From Octopus sinensis (lineage: Eukaryota), in NCBI RefSeq assembly GCF_006345805.1, contig NC_043011.1, positions 28,532,464 through 28,596,463 of the forward strand: 64,000 bases of DNA, in the 5' to 3' direction. The translations under genes and the position numbers were made by a program. This document shows positions 253 to 53,655 of this stretch, piece by piece (the first letter of the stretch is position 1; each line of letters starts with the position of its first letter). The notes below the pieces were generated by a model. That model was given only the letters and a program-made list of their open reading frames with translations, was not told where the DNA came from and searched no databases.

Positions 253-1200
253 GGCGGTGGGGAGGCGAGCCGGCAGAATCGTTAGCGTATCGGATAAATT
301 GCTTAACAGCATTTTCTCCGTCTTTACGTTCTGAGTTCAAATTCCACCGTGGCCAAATTTACCTATCATCATTTCAGGCTTAACGAAATAAGTACTAGTT
401 TATTTTATTAAATTTGCCATAAAGGCAGTACATAGAGTAAGGTAGCTTGCGGGCTGGACACGGACATTAATGAGATGAATGATAATGATACAAGGATGAT
501 AGGGATGGGAGAAGACAAAAAGCGCCCGCCGACTTTTGCTTCTCTAAAACATTCTTTTTAAAAAACACCGAATGGGGTCTTAGCCCTCTTACCAATTTTA
601 CAATTATTCCAATTTATGGACTAAAAAGTCCATTACAAATTAAAGCAATTTAACACACATAATGAGGCGATAAACCTGTTACACAAATGAGTCTCCATCC
701 CCAATCAACTTTCTTGCCTCCTGCAGGCATTCCTACAACCCCTAGTTGGGGGCCCATAAACAAAATCTATACTCCTCCTTTGAGAAGGGGTCCCTTATAC
801 AGTAGAAGTTCCTTTCTTCTAGTACCAGAGCAGCCACCTGCGGAGGCCACTTTGGAATACAAGTCGAGTCTTTCAAGTCCCGACTATTAAAGGAACTTTG
901 TATAAAATTATCTCTAATCCCTCCCCTGAAATAGATCACATATTCTTCAACATTTCCACTGGGAGGGGGCTTTCTTCTACACACCCACCCATCCCGCTCA
1001 GGTGGCAAACGTCCCACCGAAGGGGTTTCGGGACATGCCGCCAGTGCACCAGCAACCGCCGGCAATGTCCCGTTTTTCTTCTTTCTGTTTTTTTCTTTCC
1101 CTTTTACGTACTAGAAATAAGTACTAATTGAGTTCAAAGCTCGATATAATCGTCTAACCCCTCCCGCAATATTTCAAGTCTTGTGACTATACTAGAAAGG
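253..1200 (+). mobile_element. SINE-A copy (tRNA-like head, short tail) split by a 716-bp insertion at 398-1113
   Basis: Head GGCGAGCCGGCAGAATCGTTAGC with B-box-like GAGTTCAAATTCC. The body stops at GAAATAAGTACTA (385-397), resumes after the same 13-mer (1114-1126), and continues to the GTCTTGTGACTATACTAGAAAG tail. Confidence 0.8.
398..1113 (-). mobile_element. Non-autonomous retroelement with L1/Tx1-type 3' tail and short ORF remnant (742-1065)
   Basis: Bounded by a 13-bp TSD. The minus-strand 3' end CTCTATGTACTGCCTTTATGGCAAATTTAATAAAATAAAC resembles the LINE/SINE tail elsewhere in the window. It carries a GC-richer 107-aa ORF of unknown homology. Confidence 0.65.
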
Positions 1201-5994: not shown

Positions 5995-7800
5995 TGGCTT
6001 AGCCGATAACATCTAACCCAGTTCTTGACTGGTACTTTAATTTATCGATCCTGAAAGGATGAAAATCAAAGTTGACCTCAGTGAGATTAGAATCTATGGC
6101 GTAAAGAGCTGGAACAAAACAGTAATTTTTCTTTTATAACGCTCTAACAATTCCGCAAGATCTATTTCCTTTTCTTTTATTACCCACAAGGGGCTAGATA
6201 CAGAATGGTCCAATTACAAAACAAACATATACAAAGACGGGGAACTTAAAAATACAAAAGAAGATGAAATAAGAATAGAAAAAATTAAAAGAAACGAATG
6301 GTAATATGAAGAGTGTATAAAATGAGGCGCAATGCCTACTCGATCCCCGAAATCGAGTGGTTACATTTGGACAGTTTTTTTCCTTTTCAATGCACATTTC
6401 AAAGACTTTTTTTTTTTTTTTGCTTCACTAATTACAAATAAATTTCTTTTAATTTTTCTAACTCTTCAACTTCAATTTCCGAAGATGGAATTTCAGGCAA
6501 TAGAAAACTTTTCACATCATATGTAATTTCAGCAATTTCTTTTTTAAATTTATAATACTTTTCACAAGGCATTAAAATTCTCTTATCGCCTACATCAAAA
6601 TTGTCTTCCGACAACTTCACATTCACCAGTTTCCCCATTTTCTCAACTATTCTTTCTGCTTTCTCATCTTCTTCGTACAAAACCAAAACTCCCTGATATC
6701 CAACTCAGTCACACTCCTCTGCTTTTCTTTTTTTCGAATTTTGGTGCAAAACCAGTAACTTTGAAGAAAGGGGAGAGTCGATAACATCGACCTTAGTTTT
6801 TTACTGATATATCATTTTATCGGTTCTGAAAGGATGAAAAGTATAGTTGAACTCGGCGAGATTTGAACATGGAATGTAAGGATTTAGAACAAGAAATTTT
6901 TTCCGACGATTTAACGATCCTGCTAGCTCACCGCCTTTACGACAAAAGTAGTAATACTTTTCTACTGCATACACAAGGTAGGAAATTTTCTGTGAATGTG
7001 CAAGCGGAATACATCGACCGCGCCAAAGCTCAAAGCTGCTTATTTTATCAGCCTTAAAAGGATGCACTCCGAACGTCAACTCGGACGAAATGCCGGTAAG
7101 AATTTTTTACCAGATGTTAACGATTCTACCAGCTCGCCGCCTTACAACACAGAAAATAATAATGGTTTCAAATTTTGGCTTAAGGCCAGCAATTTTGGTG
7201 AGAGGATTAAGTCCATTACATCGAACTCGGTGTCCAAAAGGTGCATATTTTATCGATCCCGAAAGGCTGAAAGGCGAAGGCGACCTCGGCAGAGTTTGAA
7301 CTCAGAGCACAAAGACGGACGAAATGCAAGTAAGAATTTTATTGTCATGCGAGCTAAGGATCCTTCTATCGCGCCGCATTAACAAGAAAGAAAAAATAAT
7401 GGTTTCGAATTTTAGCACTGGGGTTGGATAAGCCGATTACATTGTCCCCAGTACTCAACTGATGCTCATTTTGTCGACCCGGCAGAATTTGAACTTAGAA
7501 CGTAATGACGGACGAAATGCCGCTAAGTATTTCGCCCGGCATGCTAACAATTCAGCCAGATTGAAGCCTTTTCACTAATAATAACCATTTCTACTATGTG
7601 CACGAGGCCTGAATTTTGGGGAAGGGGGACTAGTCAATTACATCGACGCCGGTACTCAACTCCTATTTATTTCATCGACCCCGAAAGGATGAAAAGTTAA
7701 GTCGACGTCAGAGAAACTTGAACCCAGAACGTGCAGACAGGCGAAATGCCGCTAAGCATTTTGCCAAGCGCGCTAACGATTCTGCCAACTCACCGCCTCT
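5995..7800 (-). mobile_element. Head-to-tail cluster of six diverged SINE-A copies (about 5995-6165, 6735-6940, 6985-7145, 7165-7380, 7400-7575, 7590-7800)
   Basis: Repeated CCGAAAGGATGAAAGGCAAAGTCGAC...GGAATTTGAACTCAGAACGT...CTGCCAGCTCGCCGCC-type segments, all on the same strand. Confidence 0.8.
6163..6730 (-). mobile_element. Non-autonomous retroelement with L1/Tx1-type 3' tail and 84-aa ORF remnant (6432-6686)
   Basis: Minus-strand end TTGTAATTGGACCATTCTGTATCTAGCCCCTTGTGGGTAATAAAAGAAAAGGAAATA matches the LINE 3' end at 10111-10165. No TSD found. Confidence 0.55.
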
Positions 7801-7806
7801 AATAAT

Positions 7807-7841
<35 letters not shown>

Positions 7842-7863
7842 TAATAATAATAATAATATTTTA

Positions 7864-8093
7864 GGGCGGCGAGCTGGCAGAAATGTTAGCACGCCGGGCG
7901 AAATGCGTAGCCGTATTTCGTTTGCTGTTACCTTCTGAGTTCAAATTCTGCCGAGGTCGACTTTGCCTTTCATCCTTTCGGGGTCGATAAAATAAGTACC
8001 AATTATGAACTGGGGTCGATGTAATCGACTTAATCCCTTTGTCTGTCCTCGTTTGTTCCCTCTATGTTTAGCCCCCTGTGGGCAATAAATAAA

Positions 8094-8124
<31 letters not shown>

Positions 8125-8315
8125 TAATATTTTCTACAATAGACATTAGGCCTGAAATTTTACAGGAGGGGGCTAATCGATTACATTGAACCCGGTACAC
8201 AACTATAAGGGCAAAGTCGACCGCGGCGGAAATTTGAACTGAGAACGTTACGACGGACGAAATGCTGCTAAGCATTTTTGCCGGGCGTGCTAACGATTCT
8301 GCCAGCTCTCCGTCT
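7864..8315. mobile_element. SINE-A long-tail copy (+, 7864-8090) and short-tail copy (-, about 8135-8315)
   Basis: Full head GGCGGCGAGCTGGCAGAAATGTTAGCACGCCGGGCGAAATG and tail TTTAGCCCCCTGTGGGCAATAAA, followed by the reverse-complement copy. Confidence 0.85.
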
Positions 8316-8319
8316 TCGA

Positions 8320-8368
<49 letters not shown>

Positions 8369-8740
8369 GAACACCCCCGCCAACAATAATGACCGTAACA
8401 ACAACATTGATAGCAAGATCGTGAATATGATGCAACAGAATTTACAACAACCTCAAGGTTTGTCGTACGTACAACTGTTAACGACAGCTAAGTCATTCAC
8501 TCTTGAGATTTGATCGTTAAGAGTGCTGAGAGCAGCAACTTCAGCGTTAAAACAACAACGATAGTAGGAACTACATGCGAATACAGATATGGGAGTAGAT
8601 TAATCGCATCCATTACAGGTCAGGCACGGCAGCAACAGCAGCAGGAGCCCTCATCAACAACTGCTATGAGTTAAGTATGGAATTGCTTTCACCGCAACTG
8701 CTTCGAATAAGGTATCAAGTACTACTACTACTACTACTAC

Positions 8741-9774: not shown

Positions 9775-10029
9775 ATATAAATAATATATAAATATATGCA
9801 TATATACATACATATATGTACATACCTACATATATATATATATGTATATATATACATGCATATATGGGTATACATACATGCATGCATGCATACATACATA
9901 CATACATACATACATACATACATACATACATACATACATACATACATACATACATACATACATACATACATGCGTACGTACGTGCATAAATACATAGCGA
10001 GAGAGAGAAACAGAAATAGATAGATAGAT

Positions 10030-10110
<81 letters not shown>
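9775..10110. repeat. Compound (TA)n/(CATA)n/(GATA)n microsatellite
   Basis: Direct reading. Confidence 0.95.
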
Positions 10111-12564
10111 TGTTTCTTTATTAGCCACACAGGGCTGCACACAGACGGGACAAATTACAAAGTTTTCTTTTTTGAGGAAAAGAAAGGTAGGGTAGGTTGT
10201 CGATCAAAAGGGATCGTAAATGGGAAAGAAGAAAAAAAAAGAAAAAAGGAAAAGAAACAAAAGGAAAAAAACCATCAATAGGGATCGTGTATCACAGTGT
10301 CATGATGTAAAGTGTAAAGGGGGAAGCAGATAAGGTTTATCCGTGGGAAGAAAAGCCTACGGAAAAAGCCACGGTAACCTCGGTCAATATTGTTACATGT
10401 TACCACATTTGTGTGCAAGTAGGTAACCCTCTGTTTTAAATTTCCGGGTTCATAGGATTATGCTCAAGGTGGTTTCGTCATTCATATGTGCCATCCTTGC
10501 TACATTCACCCATCTTTTTTTAAAACATTCGCTGGACAAAACTTGACTCTCTACTCTCACTTTCCTTTTCTACTTGAAGAAGTAGATGAGAAATTGACCA
10601 GAGAGGAAAGTGTTTGTCTCCAATCCTTTCAGACGCGTCCACCAGATACATTCTTTCGCCATAGCCACAAGGATGATGAAAATAGCTCTTCCTTCCCGTT
10701 TGAAGGCAGGAGGGGTGACAATATTGACGATAGACTCAGCTGATAAACCGACTCGTCCCACACGTGACAGCAGTTGTTCGACATAAGCCCACAGGTCGGA
10801 AATTGTTGGACACTGGTTTCGTCGCTCTGACCGCATCTCGGGCAGGTCGGCCCCGTGTTTCCCGAGCCGTGTCTGTAGAGCTTATCCCGAACGGGTAGCG
10901 CTTCTCGGTAGCACTGCCAGGCCAGGGATCTCTGGAAGTTGTCCATGTGCCCTGGCCCGAAAGTCGTCCCGAACAGGCGGGTCAGGTATTCCTCGTCGAA
11001 GTCCAGGTTCGCCCCGAGCTCGTCGTCGTACCTCCCCTCCACTAATCCCCTATAGAATGCTTTGGCTGTGATGGAGTCACTCAAGGTCGATCCAGCACGG
11101 CAGAGTTGCTTGAGAGCAACGCGACACTCGCGTTGCCATTCGCCCTTCCTCGGCCTCTTTTTGATCCGCGACTGTAGTTCGGTCATGGAGACGAGCTGCG
11201 GGAAAGCGTGCCCCACAAACGGTGACCACACCTGTTCACCATCGTCTACGAAGAGCCGGAGATGTCGCAGTCTCAGCGCGCGTCTGCGCATCATCAACCA
11301 CGGCATGCCCAGTCCTCCTTTTAACGGGTGTTGACAGCAAATGGATCGCCTGACCATCGGGACGCATCCTTTCCACAAGAAGCGAAAGAGAATGCGTTCT
11401 AGTTTGGTGATGGTAGGGTTGGGACAAGGCACGACGGTCAGACAGTAGTAGATGACGGACGCGATGTACGTGTTCGCCACCTCCGCCCGACCTTTTAGGG
11501 ACAGTTTCCTCTCGGCCCATTGCCGGGCGAGAGTGACCACCCTACTCGTTATCTCGTTCCAGTTCTTCTCCACTTGGAGGTCCGGACCAAACTAGAACCC
11601 GAGCAACTCGACCGGACCGTCGGTCCAGCGTCCCACGACGGAGGCGCTGGTGGACGGCATGGGCTTTCTTCTCCAGGTGCATAGTCACAAGCCCACTGAC
11701 TTTTCCCGGTTGATTTTCGCTCCGGTTTATCAGCTGAGTCTATCGTAGTTTTTCAGTGTCTCGCCGACCTGCTCGATGTGCTCGTGGCTAGACACTATGA
11801 CGGTGACGTCGTCCGCGTATGCAGACACGCTCGTCCCGCATCCCAGTTCTCGCGGGATGCCCCTCAAAGTTGCCAGCTTCCGCAATAATGGCTCGAGAGT
11901 CAATACGTATAGAAGCAACGAGAGGAGGCATCCCTGAAGGACCGAACGTGCGATGTCGAAAGGTCTCGATAGATGTCCATTTACGCGAATTACCGAACGG
12001 ATGCCGCTGTACAAAGCGGCTATCCAGCCGCGGAAGACGGGACCGAAGCCAGCCGCTCTGAGGACAGCCTCCAAGTATCGATGGTCTACCCTATCGAAAG
12101 TTTTCGATTGATCCAAATTGATCAGCGCCCCACCCATGCCAGGTTCGTTAACTACCCTGTCTATGATGTAGCGCATCAGGTGGAGGTTGTCATGGATGGT
12201 CCGGCGCGGCACATCGCACGTTTGCGCCTTGTCGACCAGTTTCTCGATGACAAGCGCCAACCTCTTGGCTAACACCTTGGCCAAAATTTTCAAGTCTGCA
12301 TTAAGCAGAGCGATGGGCCTAAAGTTATCTATTACATTTCCCTTGTTTAGATCTTTCTTCAGCTGTGTTACGGCTCCTTGGCTCACAAAACCAGGAATGC
12401 TCCTGTTTTGCTGCCCGTTGCAGTACACCGCTGCCAAGACGTCTCCAAACAAGTCTGGCATACAACTGTAAAGCTCGTAGGGTAGACCATCCAAACCCGG
12501 CGATTTGTCCCTCGAGCATTCTGCCATCGCGTCCTGCACTTCCGCCGCCGTGATGGCACCTTCG
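10111..12564 (-). mobile_element. 5'-truncated L1-clade (Tx1-like) LINE: ORF2 RT and C-terminal zinc-knuckle region with frameshifts/stops, plus 3' UTR
   Basis: Motifs SPGLDGLPYELY, NFRPIALLNADLKILAKVLAKRL, LDQSKTFDRVDH, QGCLLSLLLY, SAYADDV, KLSLKGRAEVAN, KGGLG and CPRCG in ORFs 11730-12539 and 10629-11573 (-). Confidence 0.9.
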
Positions 12565-12611
<47 letters not shown>

Positions 12612-12653
12612 AGATCTCTACCACAATCTTCGTAGACAAGTATTGGCATATAG

Positions 12654-15886: not shown

Positions 15887-16399
15887 TCCACACATATGTG
15901 TGTGTGGGGGGAGGGTTGTATGCATGTACGAGTGTGCATGTGTCTGCGACTCTGTCTCTTTAGTCGTGTATGTGATGCAATGTTTGTTTCTGTTGGTGAG
16001 CGTGTGTGGCATCTGTATATATTGACGGCTTGATTTCTTACCCTCCCGCCTCTGTTGTTCGTACATGTCAAAGATGACGAAGTGTATTAAATACATGTGA
16101 AAAGAAAACAATATTACGTGTTGTTTGTAGGAGGTCATTACGTGTTTGTATACGCATTGTACTTCTGTTTAATTTCTTCATGTTTACTTTCAATATTCCC
16201 AGCTGTAGGAGAGAAGATTTACTCTCTTTCTTCTATGATTCTGCGCCTTTAATTTACGTCGCACGTGCTTGGGTACTTATGTGCATGTGCGCGTGCGTGT
16301 GTGTGTGTGTGTCTGTCTGTCTGTACGCCTGTGTGAGGGTGTTCATGACCCCGTTAACTTAAATGCAATCTTTCTTTGATAGGTTCTGTTCTATACTTT

Positions 16400-16772
16400 T
16401 CTACTCAAGGCACAAGGCCTGAAAATTTTAGGGAGGAGGCCTGTCGATTAGATCGACCCCAGTACGCAACTGTTACTTAATTTATTGACCCTGAAAGGAT
16501 GAAAGGCAAAGTCGACTTGGTCGGAATTTGAACTCAGAACGTAAAGACAGATGAAATACCTATTTATTTACAACCCACAAGGGGCTAAACACAGAGCGGA
16601 CAAACAAGGACATACAAACGGATTATGTTGATTATATCGATCCCAGTGTGTAAATGGTACTTAATTTATCGACCCCGAAAGGATGAAAGGCAAAGTCGAC
16701 TTCGGCGGAATTTGAACTCAGAACGTAACGGCAGACAAAATAACGCTAAGCATTTCGCTCGGCGTGCTAACA
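16400..16772 (-). mobile_element. SINE-A tandem: long-tail unit joined at GGTATTTC (16560/16561) to a short-tail body
   Basis: Minus strand CCCCTTGTGGGTTGTAAATAAATA|GGTATTTCATCTGTCTTTACG. Confidence 0.8.
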
Positions 16773-16773
16773 T

Positions 16774-16813
<40 letters not shown>

Positions 16814-19572: not shown

Positions 19573-20420
19573 ACAAAGATATACACACAAAGATATACAC
19601 ACTCAAAGATACACGCACAAAGATATACACACAAAGATATACACACAAAGATATACACAAAGATATACACACAAAGATATACACACACAAAGATATACAC
19701 ACAAAGATATACACACAAAGATATACACACAAAGATATATACACAAAGATATACACAAATATATACACACAAAGATATACACACACAAAGATATACACAC
19801 AAAGATATGCACACAAAGATATACACACAAAGATATACACACAAAGATATACACACAAAGATATACACACACAAAGATATATACACAAAGATATACACAA
19901 ATATATACACACAAAGATATACACACACAAAGATAAACACACAAAGATATTCACACACGGATATACACACAAAGATATATACACAAAGATATACACAAAT
20001 ATATACACACAAAGATATACACACACAAAGATATACACACAAAGATATACACACAAAGATATACACAAAGATATACACAAAGATATACACACAAAGATAT
20101 ACACACACAAAGATATACACACAAAGATATACACACAAAGATATATACACAAAGATATACACAAAGATATACACACAAAGATATACACACAAAGATATGC
20201 GCACAAGGATATACACACAAAGATATATACACACACATTGATATACGTACAAAGATGTACAAAAGATATCCACACAAAGATATACACAAAGCTATACACA
20301 CAAAGATATACACACAAAAGATATACACACACAAAGATATACAAACAAAAATATATACACACACATAGATGTACACACAAAAATATACACAAGATATACA
20401 CACAAAGATATACACACACC
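19573..20420. repeat. Minisatellite of AAAGATAT(AC)n units (about 12-16 bp) with higher-order blocks
   Basis: Direct reading; the variant block ...GATATATACACAAAGATATACACAAATATAT... recurs three times. Confidence 0.9.
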
Positions 20421-20471
20421 ACACACACACACACACAAAGATATACGCACAAATATACACAAACACACACA

Positions 20472-20527
<56 letters not shown>

Positions 20528-29356: not shown

Positions 29357-29752
29357 GGTGGTGGTGGTGGTGATGGTGGTGGTGGTGGTGGTGATGGTGG
29401 TGGTGGCGGCGGCGGTGGCGGGGATGGTGGTTATGGTGGTGCTGGTGAGGGGTGGGGCCGGGGTGGGGCCGGGGACTTTTGTTGTGGTAATTGTGCTAGA
29501 ATCGTGTAGTAATTATAGTAATTTTGTTGTAGTAATTGAAGGCTGGCGGGGTGGTTATTGTTGTGGTAGTGATTGTGGTGGCGGCGGTTGTGGTGGTGGT
29601 GGTGGTGGTTGTGGTTGTGGTTGTGATGGTGTTGGTGGTGGTGGTGGTGGTGTTGGTGGTGGTGGTGGTATTAAGGGTAACATTATTTTTCTTCATCATC
29701 ATCGTGATCATCGTCATCATCATCATCATCATCATCACCACCATCATCATCC

Positions 29753-29783
<31 letters not shown>

Positions 29784-29891
29784 TATCATCATCGTCATCA
29801 CTATCATCATCAATCATCATCAAACGTCATCATCATCAACATCATGATCATCATCATGATCATTATCATAATCGTCATCAATAACAGCCTT

Positions 29892-29933
<42 letters not shown>

Positions 29934-30320
29934 GTCATCATCATCATCATCATCATCATCATCGTCATCATCACTATTCGTCCCCGTCATTCATCATCAT
30001 CTTCATCATCATCACCCATCATCATCATCATCATCACCCATCATCATCATCATCCCATCATCATCTTCATCATCATCATCACCATCATCATAATCACCAT
30101 CATCATTATCATCATCATCATCATCGTCATCATCACCATTCGTCCCCGTCATTCATCATCATCACTCCCATCATCATCTTCATCATCATCATAATCACCA
30201 TCATCATCATCATCATCACTCCCATCATCATCATCATCATGACCATCATTATCATCATCATCACCACCATTCGTCCCCGTCGTTCATCATCATCATCACT
30301 CCCATCATCATCATCATGAC

Positions 30321-30361
<41 letters not shown>

Positions 30362-30370
30362 CCATCATCT
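29320..30370. repeat. Compound (GGT)n/(GTT)n then (CAT)n trinucleotide tract with internally duplicated blocks
   Basis: Direct reading; the (C)ATTCGTCCCCGTC motif recurs three times. Confidence 0.95.
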
Positions 30371-30628: not shown

Positions 30629-30728
30629 NNNNNNNNNNNNNNNNNNNNNNNNNNNNNNNNNNNNNNNNNNNNNNNNNNNNNNNNNNNNNNNNNNNNNNNN
30701 NNNNNNNNNNNNNNNNNNNNNNNNNNNN
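30629..30728. other. Scaffold gap (100 N) after a (GA)n tract
   Basis: Run of 100 N; sequences on either side may not be adjacent. Confidence 0.99.
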
Positions 30729-34631: not shown

Positions 34632-34783
<152 letters not shown>

Positions 34784-34784
34784 G

Positions 34785-35195
34785 AGAGCTGGCAGGAACG
34801 TTAGCACGCCGGGCGAAATGCTGAGCGGTATTTCGTTTGCCGCTACGTTCTGAGTTCAAATTCCGCCGAGGTCGACGTTGCTTTTCATTCTTTTGGGGTC
34901 GATTAAATAAATACCAGTTACGCACTGGGGTCGATATAATCGACTTAATCCGTTTGTCTTTCCTCGTTTGTCCTCTCTGTGTTTAGCACCCTGTGGGTAG
35001 TAAAGAAGTAGGTATTTCGTCTGCCACTACGTTCTGAGTTCAAATTCCGCCGAAGTCGACTTTGCCTTTCATCCTTTCAGGATAGATTAAACAAGTACCA
35101 GTCACGCACTGGGCTCGATATAATCGACTTAATCCGTTTGTCTGTCCTGGTTTGTCCCCTCTGTGAGTAGCCCCTTGTTGGCAGTAAAGAAATAA
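34785..35195 (+). mobile_element. SINE-A tandem joined at GGTATTTCG (35011)
   Basis: Long tail CCCTGTGGGTAGTAAAGAAGTA directly followed by GGTATTTCGTCTGCC; the second unit also has the long tail. Confidence 0.85.
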
Positions 35196-35198
35196 GAC

Positions 35199-35265
<67 letters not shown>

Positions 35266-35282
35266 GAGATAGATAGATAGAG

Positions 35283-35357
<75 letters not shown>

Positions 35358-35425
35358 GAGATAGATAGATAGAGAGATAGATAGATAGATACATACATAC
35401 ATACATACATACATACATACATACA

Positions 35426-35457
<32 letters not shown>

Positions 35458-36588: not shown

Positions 36589-37110
36589 CATTTTACTTTA
36601 TATATATGTGTGTATGTATGTATGTAAAATTGAGTTGGTTTAAACCCCAGAATGAGTCCCTTAAAATGGGAGTAATTGTAAGTATAATTTTCTTCCATAC
36701 CCGCCTACTGGAAGTACACACACTGCCACAGCCTCACAGCTTTCTATTAAATGTCAAGAGACACTGCAATATTGCCGATCAAGTGTACCGGTGAGTGTCG
36801 GAACACACGTAAATTGGATGTCGAACAAAATGTAGAAGAGAACTCCAGTAACGAAATATAGATTTTAGATTCTAAGTGAGCAGTAGGAACATTTATAGCG
36901 CAGAGCTCACACTCTCTCATCTTATTTTCACATCCACTTACTTTGTACTAATACAGCGACGTGAATACGTTGGAACGTTTTGTTAAGTAGAGAAGATCAA
37001 GTTTAATATATCGTTGGTAAGATATTCTAAGTTAGAACTCAGCTCCAACTGTCCACCAATGACGATATCCAGCCTAAGCACCGTTGCAATGCCAAGATGA
37101 GAAAATAACG

Positions 37111-37785
37111 AGGCGGCCAGCTGGCAGAATCGTTAGCACGCCGGGCGAAATGCTTGGCAGCATTTCGTCTGCCGCTACGTTCTGAGTTCAAATTCCGCCG
37201 AGGTCAATTTTGTCTTTCCTTTCGGGGTCGATTCAATAAGTACCAGTTACGCACTGGGGTCGATATAATCGACTTAATCCGTTTGTCTGTTCTTGTTTGT
37301 CCTATCTGTGTTTACCCCCTTGTGGGTAGTAAAGAAACAAGTATTTCGTCTGCCTTTACGTTCTGAGTTCAAATTCTGCCGGGTTCGACTTTGCCTTTCA
37401 TCCTTTCGGGGTCGATTAAATAAGTACCTATTTCTTTATTACCCACAAGGGGCTAAACACAGAGGGGACAAACAAGGACAGACATAGGTATTAAGTCGAT
37501 TACATCGACTCCAGTGCGTAACTGGTACTTAATTTATCAACCCCGAAAGGATGAAAGACAAAGTCGACCTCGGCGGAATTTGAACTCACAACGTAACGCA
37601 GACGAAATACCGCTAAGCATTTCGCCCGGCGTGCTAACGTTTCTGCCAGCTCACCGCCTTATTAAATAAGTACCGATTAAATAAGTACCAGTTACACACT
37701 GGGGTCGATGTAATCGACTTAATCCTTTTGTCTGTCCTTGTTTGTCCCCTCTACGTTTAGCCCCTTGTGGGCAATAAGGAAATAA
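37111..37785. mobile_element. Nested SINE-A complex: + unit, + unit from 37341, and a full - copy (37429-37660) inserted with a 14-bp TSD
   Basis: ATTAAATAAGTACC at 37415-37428 and 37661-37674 (and again at 37676-37689). Confidence 0.85.
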
Positions 37786-38392
37786 GATGAGAAAATAACC
37801 TATGTTGAGTGAAACTTTTATCAAGTCTTTCTGGTTTTGTTTTGGGATGTATTGCAAGAAGGCTGTTCACATATTGATGCTTCCAATTTAGAGTTGGTTA
37901 AGGAAATGTGAAAATATTTATCATCTGCAATAGATCCGCCTGTAATTAGCAATAACAACAGAAAAGAAATAGATGGAATTCATAAGAAGTACGTTTGCTA
38001 GGACATTTTTTATACTAGATACGATCGAAGGCCTTGATAATAGCAAAATTTCCCAAAGGCCTGAGTCCCTAGTGTGTGATGTTATAGAACACGTAATCAA
38101 ATTGATCTGGTTCTGCGAGTACCATGCAAAGAAATATTGGAATGAGAGAAAGAGATAAAGTGACGAAGGAAGTGTTTGGTAACAACTGTTTTTATATTCT
38201 TTGATATGTTGGAAGGAAATGTGATATCACAATATGATACCGACAGAGAGACCGACAGACAAACTGATTTACATTGAGAGAAAGTATTTCGATTCAGAAA
38301 GACGGGAAGATGGATGGTTGCATGCATCAATGAATGCATGGACGCATAGATAACTAGCGAGACAGGCAGATAGGCAGATAGATAGATAGATG

Positions 38393-45299: not shown

Positions 45300-45815
45300 C
45301 AGCTCTCTTTACTCTTTTACTCTTTTACTCTTTTACTTGTTTCAGTCATTTCACTGCGGCCACGCTGGAGCACCGCCTTTAGTCGAGCAACTCGACCCCG
45401 GGACTTATTCTTTTTGTAAGCCCAGTACTTATTCTATCGGTCTCTTTTTGCCGAACCGCTACGCGACGGGGACGTAAACACACCAGCATCGATTGTCAAG
45501 CAATGCTAGGTGAACAAACACAGACGCACAAACGCACACACATACATATATATATACATATATACGACAGGCTTCTTTCAGTTTCCGTCTACCAAATCCA
45601 CTCACAAGTCATTGGTCGGCCCGGGGCTATAGCAGAAGACACTTGCCCAAGATGCCACGCAGTGGGACTGAACCCGGAACCATTTATTTTATCGATTCCG
45701 AAAGGATGAACGACACTGTCGACCTCGACAACATTTCATCCCAGGACTTAAAGAACCGGAAGAAATACTACTAGGAATTTTGTCCAGCACGTTAAGGATT
45801 CGACTAGCTCGCTGT
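45300..45815 (-). mobile_element. SINE-B (45300-45680, 5'-truncated) fused to a SINE-A remnant (45685-45815)
   Basis: Family motifs as above. Confidence 0.75.
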
Positions 45816-47588: not shown

Positions 47589-47819
47589 ACGATTTGCCTC
47601 TCTAATTTCAACTGCTTCACTCCTTCTATTACCACACTTTCTCCTACTTTCTCTTTGCAAGTGTAACGATTTGCCTCTCTAATTTCAACTGCTTCACTCC
47701 TTCTATTACCACACTTTCTCCTACTTTCTCTTTGCAAGTGTAACGATTTGCCTCTCTAATTTCAACTGCTTCACTCCTTCTATTACCACACTTTCTCCTA
47801 CTTTCTCTTTGCAAGTGTA
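47589..47819. repeat. Three identical tandem copies of a 77-bp unit
   Basis: Units start at 47589, 47666 and 47743. Confidence 0.95.
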
Positions 47820-53454: not shown

Positions 53455-53655
53455 CTTTCTACTATAGACACGAGGCCAGAAAGTTTAGGGGAGGAACCTT
53501 GTCGATTACTTCGACTCAAATACTTATTTTATCGACCCCGGAAGGATAGAAGGCAAAATCAACCTCAGTGTAATTTGAACTCAGAACATAGACAGGAGAA
53601 ATGCGGTTAAGCATTTTCTCCGGCGTTCTAACAATTCTACTTGCTGGCAGCCAAT
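53455..53655 (-). mobile_element. SINE-A copy
   Basis: Family motifs in reverse complement. Confidence 0.75.

What the first reader, a model, noticed from the sequence alone, without database searches (positions are those of the whole stretch)
37111..37785. SINE-A inserts into itself at RGTAYTT sites on both strands
Seen: long tails are followed by GGTATTT (35011, 16560 minus), GTATTTC (37341) and GGTACTT (37428 minus, with a 14-bp TSD and an additional copy of the TSD). With the 398 element (TAGTACTT), five of about ten L1-type tails in the window end at this motif inside SINE-A. Inference: a self-targeting SINE/LINE system using a high-copy SINE as a safe harbour, which I do not know to be described.
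Basis: partly seen in the sequence, partly recalled or inferred. Interest (0 to 1): 0.8.

Follow-up and report, generated by a model that had tools for sequence, protein, structure and literature searches.

The report
Dimeric octopus SINE with nested copy
The 675-bp block is one mobile two-unit (dimeric) octopus SINE that later received a third, inverted SINE copy, so most of the apparent "self-insertions" are a single junction inherited by the dimer family, though a real, modest landing-site preference for GGTAYTT probably remains.

Summary
Nine SINE-A/LINE-type 3' ends plus one related retroposon lie in the window, and five are followed by RGTAYTT.

Three of the five are the same junction, in the same register: a full SINE-A monomer (L) joined to consensus position 48 of a second monomer (R). 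No L has the host's positions 1-47 upstream. At 37.1 kb one exact 16-bp target-site duplication (TSD) brackets the whole composite. So L+R moved as one unit, a dimeric SINE, not as insertions made in place. A fourth copy of the junction lies near Octopus vulgaris rhodopsin, and the matching O. bimaculoides site is empty.

Two events are true nested insertions with TSDs. They sit in antisense orientation within 0-4 nt of each other in the SINE's CORE-like region. Chance gives this in 0.1-0.35% of simulations.

The dimer junction carries the same 7-mer at a non-homologous site and formed on at least two host types (A and B). I infer a GGTAYTT preference of the partner L1/Tx1-like LINE. Sense insertions would become dimers by Pol III read-through.

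Target-preferring Tx1-type LINE/SINE pairs and dimeric SINEs are already known. "Safe harbour" is untested.

The parts
37094..37109 (.). Left copy of the 16-bp target-site duplication AAGATGAGAAAATAAC that brackets the whole composite
   Evidence: Exact repeat found only at 37094 and 37784; sequence.
37110..37339 (+). L unit: full-length SINE-A monomer (consensus 1-231) ending GTAAAGAAACA
   Evidence: blastn to consensus, 92.6% identity. It carries the L-lineage variants TCCTAT and GGGTAG.
37340..37428 (+). R unit, first part (consensus 48-136). It starts AGTATTTCG directly after the L terminus, and its last 14 nt are TSD copy 1 of the nested element
   Evidence: 95% identity to consensus.
37429..37658 (-). 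N: full-length SINE-A (consensus 1-231) nested in antisense orientation in the CORE-like region of R, at ACT|GGTACTT
   Evidence: 94.4% identity to consensus. Perfect 3' end match. Flanked by ATTAAATAAGTACC.
37659..37674 (.). Extra (third) copy of the N target-site duplication, TTATTAAATAAGTACC, next to the 5' end of N
   Evidence: 14-mer at 37661. Its origin is unresolved: a 5' extension carried from a master copy, or a local duplication.
37675..37783 (+). R unit, second part (consensus about 121-231), beginning with TSD copy GATTAAATAAGTACC and ending AATAAGGAAATA
   Evidence: (92.8% identity).
37784..37799 (.). Right copy of the 16-bp outer target-site duplication
34783..35194 (+). Second dimer: L (34783-35010) | R (35011-35194, consensus 48-231), embedded in a (GATA)n array. 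No host 5' part lies upstream
   Evidence: TRF reports period 184 x 2.0 copies. Junction.
16392..16774 (-). Third dimer: A-type L (16774-16561, 5'-truncated at consensus 18 in (TA)n) | B-type R (16560-16392, from consensus 48, with the SINE-B 3' module)
   Evidence: R16 matches B-type monomers of O. vulgaris and O. bimaculoides along its whole length.
401..1112 (-). E398: about 712-bp non-coding retroposon with tail AATAAAATAAA, nested antisense in an older CORE-type SINE (host 261-400 and 1113-about 1215) within 0-4 nt of the N site. TSD GAAATAAGTACTA at 385 and 1114
   Evidence: Its 3' hairpin plus A-rich end resemble those of SINE-A and the LINE. No coding similarity. Orientation is inferred from the tail.
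10111..12563 (-). Partner LINE, 5'-truncated: RT and C-terminal zinc-binding region. Its last about 45 bp are homologous to the SINE-A 3' end. Flanked on both sides by (TATC)n
   Evidence: Pfam RVT_1 at 1.8e-24 and a weak zf-RVT hit. Best solved relative is human L1 ORF2p at 2.5e-20. 3' end matches. Flanks.

Best explanation
Window 37094-37799 holds one retrotransposed copy of a dimeric tRNA-derived, CORE-type octopus SINE.

Structure (shown):
- A full SINE-A monomer (L) is joined by its fixed terminus GTAAAGAAATA directly to consensus position 48 (GGTATTTCG) of a second monomer (R).
- The pair entered the genome as one cDNA at AAGATGAGAAAATAAC, which is duplicated on both sides.
- A further full-length SINE-A (N) sits in antisense orientation in the CORE-like region of R, at ACT|GGTACTT, with a 14-bp TSD.
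- The 'tail followed by GGTATTT' seen three times in the window, and once near rhodopsin in O. vulgaris, is the inherited internal junction of this dimer family. It was not made where it now lies.

Origin of the junction (inferred):
- It is the 3' junction of an old sense-orientation insertion of SINE-A at GC|GGTATTT inside another SINE.
- This happened at least twice, once in an A-type host and once in a B-type host.
- SINE-A has no TTTT Pol III terminator, so transcription from L runs on through the host's 3' part.
- The L+R RNA ends in a LINE-recognised 3' end and is itself mobile.

Target preference (inferred):
- Two independent antisense insertions hit the CORE GGTACTT (N and the 398 element). 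Together with the dimer junction this points to a preference of the partner L1/Tx1-like LINE endonuclease for N|GGTAYTT.
- SINE copies carry most such sites, so SINE-in-SINE nesting and dimer formation follow as by-products.
For: Unit transposition:
- An exact 16-bp TSD is found only at 37094 and 37784.
- No consensus 1-47 fragment lies upstream of any L unit, and no TSD surrounds L.
- Four junctions share an identical register with no filler bases: three in the window and one in O. vulgaris locus L002.
- All four L units differ from C at one site (TCC[T/T/G/T]CT). N, R37, R35, M78 and the LINE all have C there (4/4 against 0/4, hand-computed from those counts as 1/70).
- No 'R-only' copy starting at position 48 was found in the window or in L002-L004.
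- The O. vulgaris composite is absent from the matching O. bimaculoides site.

Read-through:
- The 231-bp consensus has no TTTT on the sense strand.

Two junction origins:
- R16 is B-type from within about 12 nt of the junction to its 3' end.

Target preference:
- N and E398 each have a TSD at the same CORE position within 0-4 nt and in the same relative orientation.
- Simulation gives P = 0.0008-0.0035 for such a coincidence.
- GGTAYTT occurs once per strand in the consensus, at 48 sense and at 130-136 antisense.
- SINEs are 8.2% of the window and hold 19 of 31 motif sites.

Partner LINE:
-.
- Tx1-clade target preference, including SINEs that land in another repeat: PMC4494074.
- L1-Tx1 is recently active in O. 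vulgaris: PMC13282606.
Against: - The sample is small: 64 kb plus three 24-kb loci covering one orthologous region in three species. It holds four dimers and two nested events.
- No primary nested structure was seen (host 1-about 60, then L, then host 48-end, with an internal TSD).
- Position 48 lies one base 3' of the loop of a predicted 13-bp hairpin in the SINE head. Two head-only fragments end at about 40-47. An RNA-level breakpoint with template jumping could therefore produce the same junction.
- Other insertions of the family do not land on the motif: AAGATGAG..., two in (GATA)n, one in (AAT)n. Any preference is loose.
- The motif was defined from the same data used to test it.
- The endonuclease domain of the LINE is missing from the window copy, and Tx1 membership was not tested by phylogeny.
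- The orientation of E398 rests on its tail and a short hairpin whose fold is not significant on its own.
Confidence: 0.6

Rival explanations
1. One reading: each tail|RGTAYTT junction in the window is a separate insertion of SINE-A into a resident SINE-A copy at that locus. That would be five independent self-targeting events on both strands.
For: The motif follows five of ten 3' ends. N and E398 do show TSDs made of host SINE sequence.
Against: For the three sense-strand cases, the host's positions 1-47 and an internal TSD are absent. The 16-bp TSD encloses L+R together. All four junctions share one register, and the L units share lineage-specific bases.
Confidence: 0.05
2. The L|R junction is made afresh at each retrotransposition. 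The reverse transcriptase copies a SINE RNA that ends at position 48, for example a 3' half cut in the loop of the head hairpin. It then jumps to the 3' end of a second SINE-A RNA, giving a chimeric retrocopy like the U6-L1 chimeras. The resemblance of GGTATTT to the CORE target would then be coincidence.
For: - A single outer TSD fits this model.
- Position 48 lies one base past the loop of a 13-bp hairpin.
- Head-only fragments end at about 40-47: one in O. bimaculoides with its own TSD, and one in the O. vulgaris composite next to an AAAA filler. This shows that internal priming and template jumps do occur in this family.
- Both A|A and A|B combinations exist.
Against: - Four of four junctions have no filler bases and share the exact register. 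The one evident jump at L002 does have filler.
- L always ends at the exact canonical terminus. A Pol III transcript would be expected to end in downstream flank.
- No R-only copies were seen.
- The L units share bases not seen in the free monomers N and M78.
- The junction 7-mer matches the independently defined CORE target, which occurs once in 227 sense positions.
Confidence: 0.2
3. There is no sequence-specific targeting. The two nested insertions coincide because the CORE stretch GATAAAATAAGTACC is the most A+T-rich part of the SINE and L1-type endonucleases favour A+T-rich DNA. The dimer is a one-off accident that amplified.
For: Other insertions of the family lie in A+T-rich or microsatellite DNA: AAGATGAGAAAATAAC, (AAT)n and (GATA)n. 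Only two independent nested events are available.
Against: The coincidence probability is 0.0008-0.0035 under uniform insertion. Even a tenfold local bias leaves it uncommon. The same 7-mer appears at the non-homologous dimer junction, which formed on two host types.
Confidence: 0.12
4. A DNA-level origin: tandem duplication of consensus 48-231, or unequal crossing-over between neighbouring SINEs.
For: TRF describes the 34.8-kb dimer as 2.0 copies of a 184-bp period.
Against: Unequal crossing-over joins homologous positions, not a terminus to position 48. The same junction occurs at four unlinked loci with different flanks, one of them inside a TSD. The duplication boundary coincides exactly with the element's 3' end.
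Confidence: 0.03

Closest known systems
Dimeric and composite SINEs that move as one unit (primate Alu, rodent B1-dID, squirrel MEN, Culex Twin SINE, colugo CYN, the shrew-mole dimeric SINE of PMC13023118)
   Same: Two SINE-related monomers are joined head to tail and moved as one unit by a LINE. One TSD surrounds the pair, and many copies share the same internal junction.
   Different: The right unit here is a 5'-truncated copy of the same (or a sister B-type) tRNA/CORE SINE, starting at position 48. It is joined without an A-rich linker beyond the fixed 11-nt terminus. At least two right-unit types share the same breakpoint. The examples other than PMC13023118 are cited from my own knowledge.
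Tx1-clade LINEs with target preference, and their SINEs (Tx1L into Tx1D; Tx1-Mar and SINEU-3 into Mariner-N4_AMi; Keno, Kibi, Koshi): Kojima 2015, PMC4494074
   Same: An L1-superfamily LINE and its non-autonomous partner land preferentially at a particular sequence carried by another high-copy repeat. Master copies sit inside the target and pass flanking target sequence on to their progeny.
   Different: The preferred motif here lies in the SINE family itself, on both strands. The preference is loose, since many insertions lie elsewhere. Tx1 membership of the octopus LINE was not tested.
L1-mediated chimeric retrocopies made by template switching (U6-L1, snRNA-Alu; Buzdin 2002 and Garcia-Perez 2007, as cited in PMC4494074)
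   Same: Two RNA-derived segments sit inside one TSD. The O. vulgaris composite with its AAAA filler looks like such an event.
   Different: The L|R junction is invariant, has no filler and is lineage-marked. It behaves as an inherited feature rather than one made anew each time.
Octopus OR1 and other CORE-SINEs (Ohshima and Okada 1994; listed as a CORE-SINE in PMC4824008)
   Same: A tRNA-like head with a B-box-like GAGTTCAAATTCC, a central stretch resembling the CORE domain (GGGGTCGATAAAATAAGTACC), and a LINE-derived 3' end.
   Different: Identity with OR1 could not be checked because no reference sequence was available. The dimeric form and the nesting hotspot were not found described in the papers I could search.
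Alu-in-Alu and L1-in-Alu nesting at A-rich linkers and tails, driven by the L1 endonuclease TT|AAAA preference (my own knowledge)
   Same: SINE-in-SINE nesting arises simply because the SINE carries the endonuclease's preferred site.
   Different: The motif here is GGTAYTT rather than an A-tract. In sense orientation it yields propagating dimers.

Membership tests
tRNA-derived CORE-type SINE | tRNA-like head with Pol III A and B boxes | tested here: inconclusive
   ARAGORN finds no tRNA and Rfam gives no match. By eye there is a B-box-like GAGTTCAAATTCC, with 5' GGCGG pairing to 3' CCGCC. The head folds better than shuffles (z = -2.1).
tRNA-derived CORE-type SINE | Conserved central CORE domain | not testable with these tools
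   No CORE reference model was available. The resemblance to the MIR/CORE segment is recalled from memory. PMC4824008 lists octopus OR1 as a CORE-SINE.
tRNA-derived CORE-type SINE | 3' end shared with a partner LINE | tested here: met
   The last 42-50 bp of SINE-A match the 3' ends of the LINE at 10111 and the LINE fragment at 6171 at 78-86% identity. All share a 4-bp hairpin plus an AAUAAAGAAAUA-like end.
Dimeric SINE propagated as a unit | One TSD around both monomers and none around either alone | tested here: met
   Exact 16-bp repeat at 37094 and 37784 only. There is no duplication flanking L. The other two window dimers lie in microsatellites, so their TSDs cannot be read.
Dimeric SINE propagated as a unit | The same internal junction at several unlinked loci | tested here: met
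   Four copies share an identical register: three in the window and one in O. vulgaris OX597836.1.
Dimeric SINE propagated as a unit | Left and right monomers each form their own lineage | tested here: inconclusive
   L units share non-C at TCCNCT and G in GGGTAG. R units show no exclusive shared base. One R is B-type. The sample is too small for a tree.
L1/Tx1-clade LINE (partner) | APE endonuclease + RT + C-terminal zinc-binding domain, placed in the Tx1 clade by phylogeny | tested here: inconclusive
   RVT_1 at 1.8e-24; zf-RVT at 20.5 bits, below the 27.5-bit cutoff. The best solved relative is human L1 ORF2p, ahead of R2. A 45-47% identical relative from another organism has Exo_endo_phos + RVT_1 + zf-RVT. 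The window copy lacks the endonuclease domain. No clade phylogeny was run.
Target-specific non-LTR retrotransposon | Most copies inserted at the same target sequence | tested here: not met
   About 12 events could be judged. Only 2 nested insertions plus 1-2 junction origins lie at GGTAYTT. The others lie at AAGATGAG..., (GATA)n (twice), (AAT)n, a SINE 5' end and other sites. This is a preference, not strict specificity.

The most novel reading that the evidence does not exclude
A CORE-type SINE and its L1/Tx1-like LINE use an endonuclease that prefers GGTAYTT, a motif the SINE itself carries once on each strand. The SINE family thereby becomes its own main landing pad. Because the SINE has no Pol III terminator, every sense-orientation hit at position 48 makes a new mobile dimer or multimer. 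This would be a self-reinforcing way of generating composite SINE families and of steering insertions away from unique DNA.
Probability: 0.3. Interest if true: 0.6.

Novelty: new variant of a known kind. Interest (0 to 1): 0.35.

Why it matters
SINEs make up roughly a tenth of octopus genomes (11.6% in O. vulgaris, PMC13282606). Their bursts are often invoked in cephalopod genome evolution. Knowing that a major family exists as a mobile dimer would improve repeat libraries, age estimates and insertion calling. So would knowing that its partner LINE may prefer a motif carried by the SINE itself. If the motif preference holds genome-wide, it offers a simple, testable route from nested insertion to a new composite SINE family, through read-through transcription. 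It would also add a mollusc case to the target-preferring Tx1-like elements known mainly from vertebrates. If it does not hold, the finding reduces to an ordinary dimeric SINE with one nested copy.

Tried and rejected
Searches that found nothing:
- An exact 21-mer of the SINE B-box region is absent from JGI metagenome contigs and from IMG/VR.
- A peptide translated across the dimer junction found no candidate in the protein collection.
- Homologues of the LINE RT are at most 74% identical. The long contig fetched from them (L001) holds no SINE-A. It served only to show the domain order of a related LINE.
- ARAGORN and Rfam gave nothing.
- A literature search for the SINE sequence itself returned no paper.

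What did work:
- A rhodopsin query brought in real Octopus DNA: L002 (O. vulgaris), L003 (O. bimaculoides) and L004 (O. sinensis), 24 kb each.
- The O. sinensis locus ends just short of the informative site.

Readings considered and rejected:
- Unequal recombination or tandem duplication. The junction is terminus-to-position-48 at unlinked loci.
- Plus-strand orientation for E398, suggested by a 39-nt pyrimidine-rich match to the LINE 3' UTR. This would leave the element without a 3' end, whereas the minus strand gives an A-rich tail and a hairpin like the family's.
- SINE copies truncated near consensus 130-136 at 53521 and 45684 as further nested events. The first is an internal deletion. 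The second is a fusion with another SINE family and was not resolved.

Full report
**What the window is.** The DNA is 31-50% G+C (mostly 31-42%) and dense in microsatellites and in tRNA-derived SINE copies. The same SINE families occur at 90-98% identity to my consensus next to the rhodopsin gene of Octopus vulgaris. B-type monomers also occur there in O. sinensis and O. bimaculoides. The window is therefore octopus DNA.

'SINE-A' is a monomer of about 231 bp. I built a consensus from eight young copies, each 5-12% diverged from it. That range includes the Jukes-Cantor distance of 0.065 reported for a SINE/LINE burst in O. vulgaris (PMC13282606).

The last 42-50 bp of SINE-A are homologous to the 3' end of a 5'-truncated LINE at 10111-12563 (minus strand). 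That LINE encodes RVT_1 and a weak zf-RVT hit. Its closest solved relative is human L1 ORF2p. L1-Tx1 elements are listed as recently active in O. vulgaris. A sister family, SINE-B, shares the first 165 bp or so but has a different 3' module.

**Checking the observation.** A search for the family's 3' end finds nine copies, against 0.08 expected by chance.
- Four are followed by RGTAYTT at exactly the coordinates given.
- The 14-mer ATTAAATAAGTACC is present three times around the minus-strand copy.
- The 398 element carries a 13-bp exact TSD.

The count of five out of about ten is correct. The 'tails' are simply the fixed terminus GTAAAGAAATA.

**What the three sense-strand cases are.** In each, a full monomer (L) is followed without a gap by a monomer starting at consensus 48 (R): 37110-37339|37340..., 34783-35010|35011-35194 and 16774-16561|16560-16392.

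An insertion made in place would leave host positions 1 to about 60 upstream of L and a duplication around L. Neither is present. Upstream of the three L units lie unique DNA, (GATA)n and (TA)n.

At 37.1 kb the exact 16-mer AAGATGAGAAAATAAC occurs only at 37094 and 37784. It lies just before L and just after the end of R. L and R therefore entered together as one cDNA.

The junctions are in identical register with no filler bases. A fourth copy of the same junction lies in O. vulgaris locus L002, 10 kb from rhodopsin. The matching site in O. bimaculoides is empty.

All four L units differ from C at one position (TCC[T/T/G/T]CT). The free monomers N and M78, both A-type R units and the LINE all have C there. 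From those counts (4/4 against 0/4) I compute an exact probability of 1/70 by hand. No copy starting at position 48 without an L was found in about 136 kb.

These points fit a dimeric SINE lineage that moves as a unit.

**How the junction arose.** This part is inferred. Three facts bear on it.
- The consensus has no TTTT. A SINE-A copy that lands in sense orientation inside another SINE would be transcribed on into the host's 3' part. The resulting RNA ends in a LINE-recognised 3' end and is mobile.
- The R unit of the 16.5-kb dimer is B-type from within about 12 nt of the junction to its end. The junction therefore formed at least twice at the same nucleotide, once on an A-type host and once on a B-type host.
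- The first bases of R, GGTATTT, match the target of the independent nested copy, GGTACTT. Each motif occurs only once per strand in the consensus.

A target-primed insertion at GC|GGTATTT explains the exact L terminus, the lack of filler and the motif.

The rival is template jumping from the 5' end of a cut SINE RNA. It has real support.
- Position 48 lies one base past the loop of a predicted 13-bp hairpin.
- Two head-only fragments end at about 40-47. One in O. bimaculoides has its own TSD. One in the O. vulgaris composite sits beside an AAAA filler.

I rate the rival lower for three reasons: the L|R junction never carries filler, L ends at the canonical base rather than in flank, and R-only copies are missing.

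**The true nested events.** N (37429-37658, minus strand) is a full-length SINE-A, 94% identical to the consensus, with perfect ends and a 14-bp TSD of host sequence.

E398 (about 401-1112) is a different, non-coding retroposon. On the minus strand its end shows the same small hairpin and A-rich terminus as the family. It sits in an older CORE-type SINE with a 13-16-bp TSD.

In host-antisense terms, N entered at AACT|GGTACTT. E398 entered between AA|CTAGTACTT and AACT|AGTACTT.

With 8-10 random insertions in this window, two land at the same consensus position (within 1-4 nt) and in the same relative orientation in only 0.08-0.35% of simulations.

The extra TSD copy beside the 5' end of N could be a 5' extension inherited from a master that itself sat in this site, as described for SINEU-2B. 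It could also be a local duplication. Its 14/14 identity to the local TSD does not decide between them.

The outer TSD cannot show whether N entered R at this locus or already in a master copy.

**How strong is 'self-targeting'?** Other events of the family do not use the motif:
- the outer target AAGATGAG...;
- the dimer at 34.8 kb and the LINE, both inside (GATA)n arrays;
- M78 in (AAT)n;
- a LINE fragment abutting a SINE 5' end.

This is at most a preference. SINEs cover 8.2% of the window but hold 19 of its 31 GGTAYTT sites. A motif preference alone would therefore place many insertions in SINEs, and no adaptive 'safe harbour' need be invoked.

**Comparison with what is known.** Dimeric SINEs are common. 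Tx1-clade LINEs and their SINEs are known to prefer sites in other high-copy repeats and to carry flanking target sequence from master copies (PMC4494074). What may be new is that the preferred motif lies in the SINE family itself, on both strands, and that sense-orientation hits convert into propagating dimers.

**Limits.** All statistics rest on 64 kb plus one orthologous region in three species. The motif was defined from the same data. The LINE's endonuclease was not seen, and its clade was not tested. Genome-wide mapping and a nicking assay would settle the matter.

**Verdict.** Novelty is modest.

Noticed in passing
window 6955-8370: Four older SINE-B-type copies lie head to tail on the minus strand (about 7797-7570, 7559-7380, 7372-7150, 7141-6955). 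Each ends in an (ATT)n-type tail. They are followed by a SINE-A monomer (7865-8095, tail expanded to (AAAT)n) and another B copy (8312-8130) between (AAT)n arrays. This looks like repeated insertion into the (TAA)n tails of earlier copies, as expected for a (TAA)n-targeting LINE partner such as Dong/R4.
   Followed up: partly
window 10016-10110, 12565-12615, 34641-34783 and 35195-35455: The partner LINE and the 34.8-kb dimer each sit inside a (GATA)n/(TATC)n array, in opposite orientations relative to the repeat. Perfect GATA-type runs are only about 1.3% of the window. Two of about eight events in them suggests a second target preference, or microsatellite growth from the insertion.
   Followed up: partly
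window 6165-6400 (minus strand) joined to 6160-5950: The 3' UTR end of a related LINE (TGTGGGTAATAAAAGAAAAGGAAATAGA) directly abuts another SINE family copy that starts at about consensus position 9. This is another tail-to-SINE composite with no RGTAYTT. It could be a nested insertion near the SINE 5' end or a template-switch chimera.
   Followed up: no
L002 24000-24260 (O. vulgaris OX597836.1, minus strand) compared with L003 about 19960 (O. bimaculoides): The composite reads L(consensus 89-230)|R(48-106), then AAAA, then SINE head(1-43). It is absent from the orthologous O. bimaculoides site. The flank shares an 11-nt microhomology (AAATGAC.CTA) with SINE positions 44-54. It looks like internal priming followed by a template jump. 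The far end lies beyond the fetched locus.
   Followed up: partly
L003 21655-21735 (O. bimaculoides): A head-only SINE fragment (consensus 1-40) is flanked by the direct repeat GTTCATCGATA. This is a tailless 5' fragment retrocopy. Its target resembles SINE positions 41-54.
   Followed up: no
window 45684-45812 (minus strand) and 45450-45683: A CORE-type SINE copy stops at about consensus 131 (GATAAAATAAATG). It continues directly into the B-box region (GGTTCCGGGTTCAGTCCCACTGCG...) of a different tRNA-derived SINE family that ends in a (TA)/(TG) microsatellite. This is a possible further composite with its breakpoint near the CORE hotspot.
   Followed up: no
window 47589-47819: A perfect 77-bp tandem repeat, 3.0 copies at 100% identity. 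It is either very recent or an assembly artefact.
   Followed up: no
window 19573-20520: A long minisatellite of a 14/28-bp unit (ACAAAGATATACAC), about 60 copies. It generates the long spurious ORFs listed there.
   Followed up: no
window 30629-30728: A run of 100 N (an assembly gap) lies next to a (TCA)n array at 29693-30369 that TRF reports as about 223 copies.
   Followed up: no
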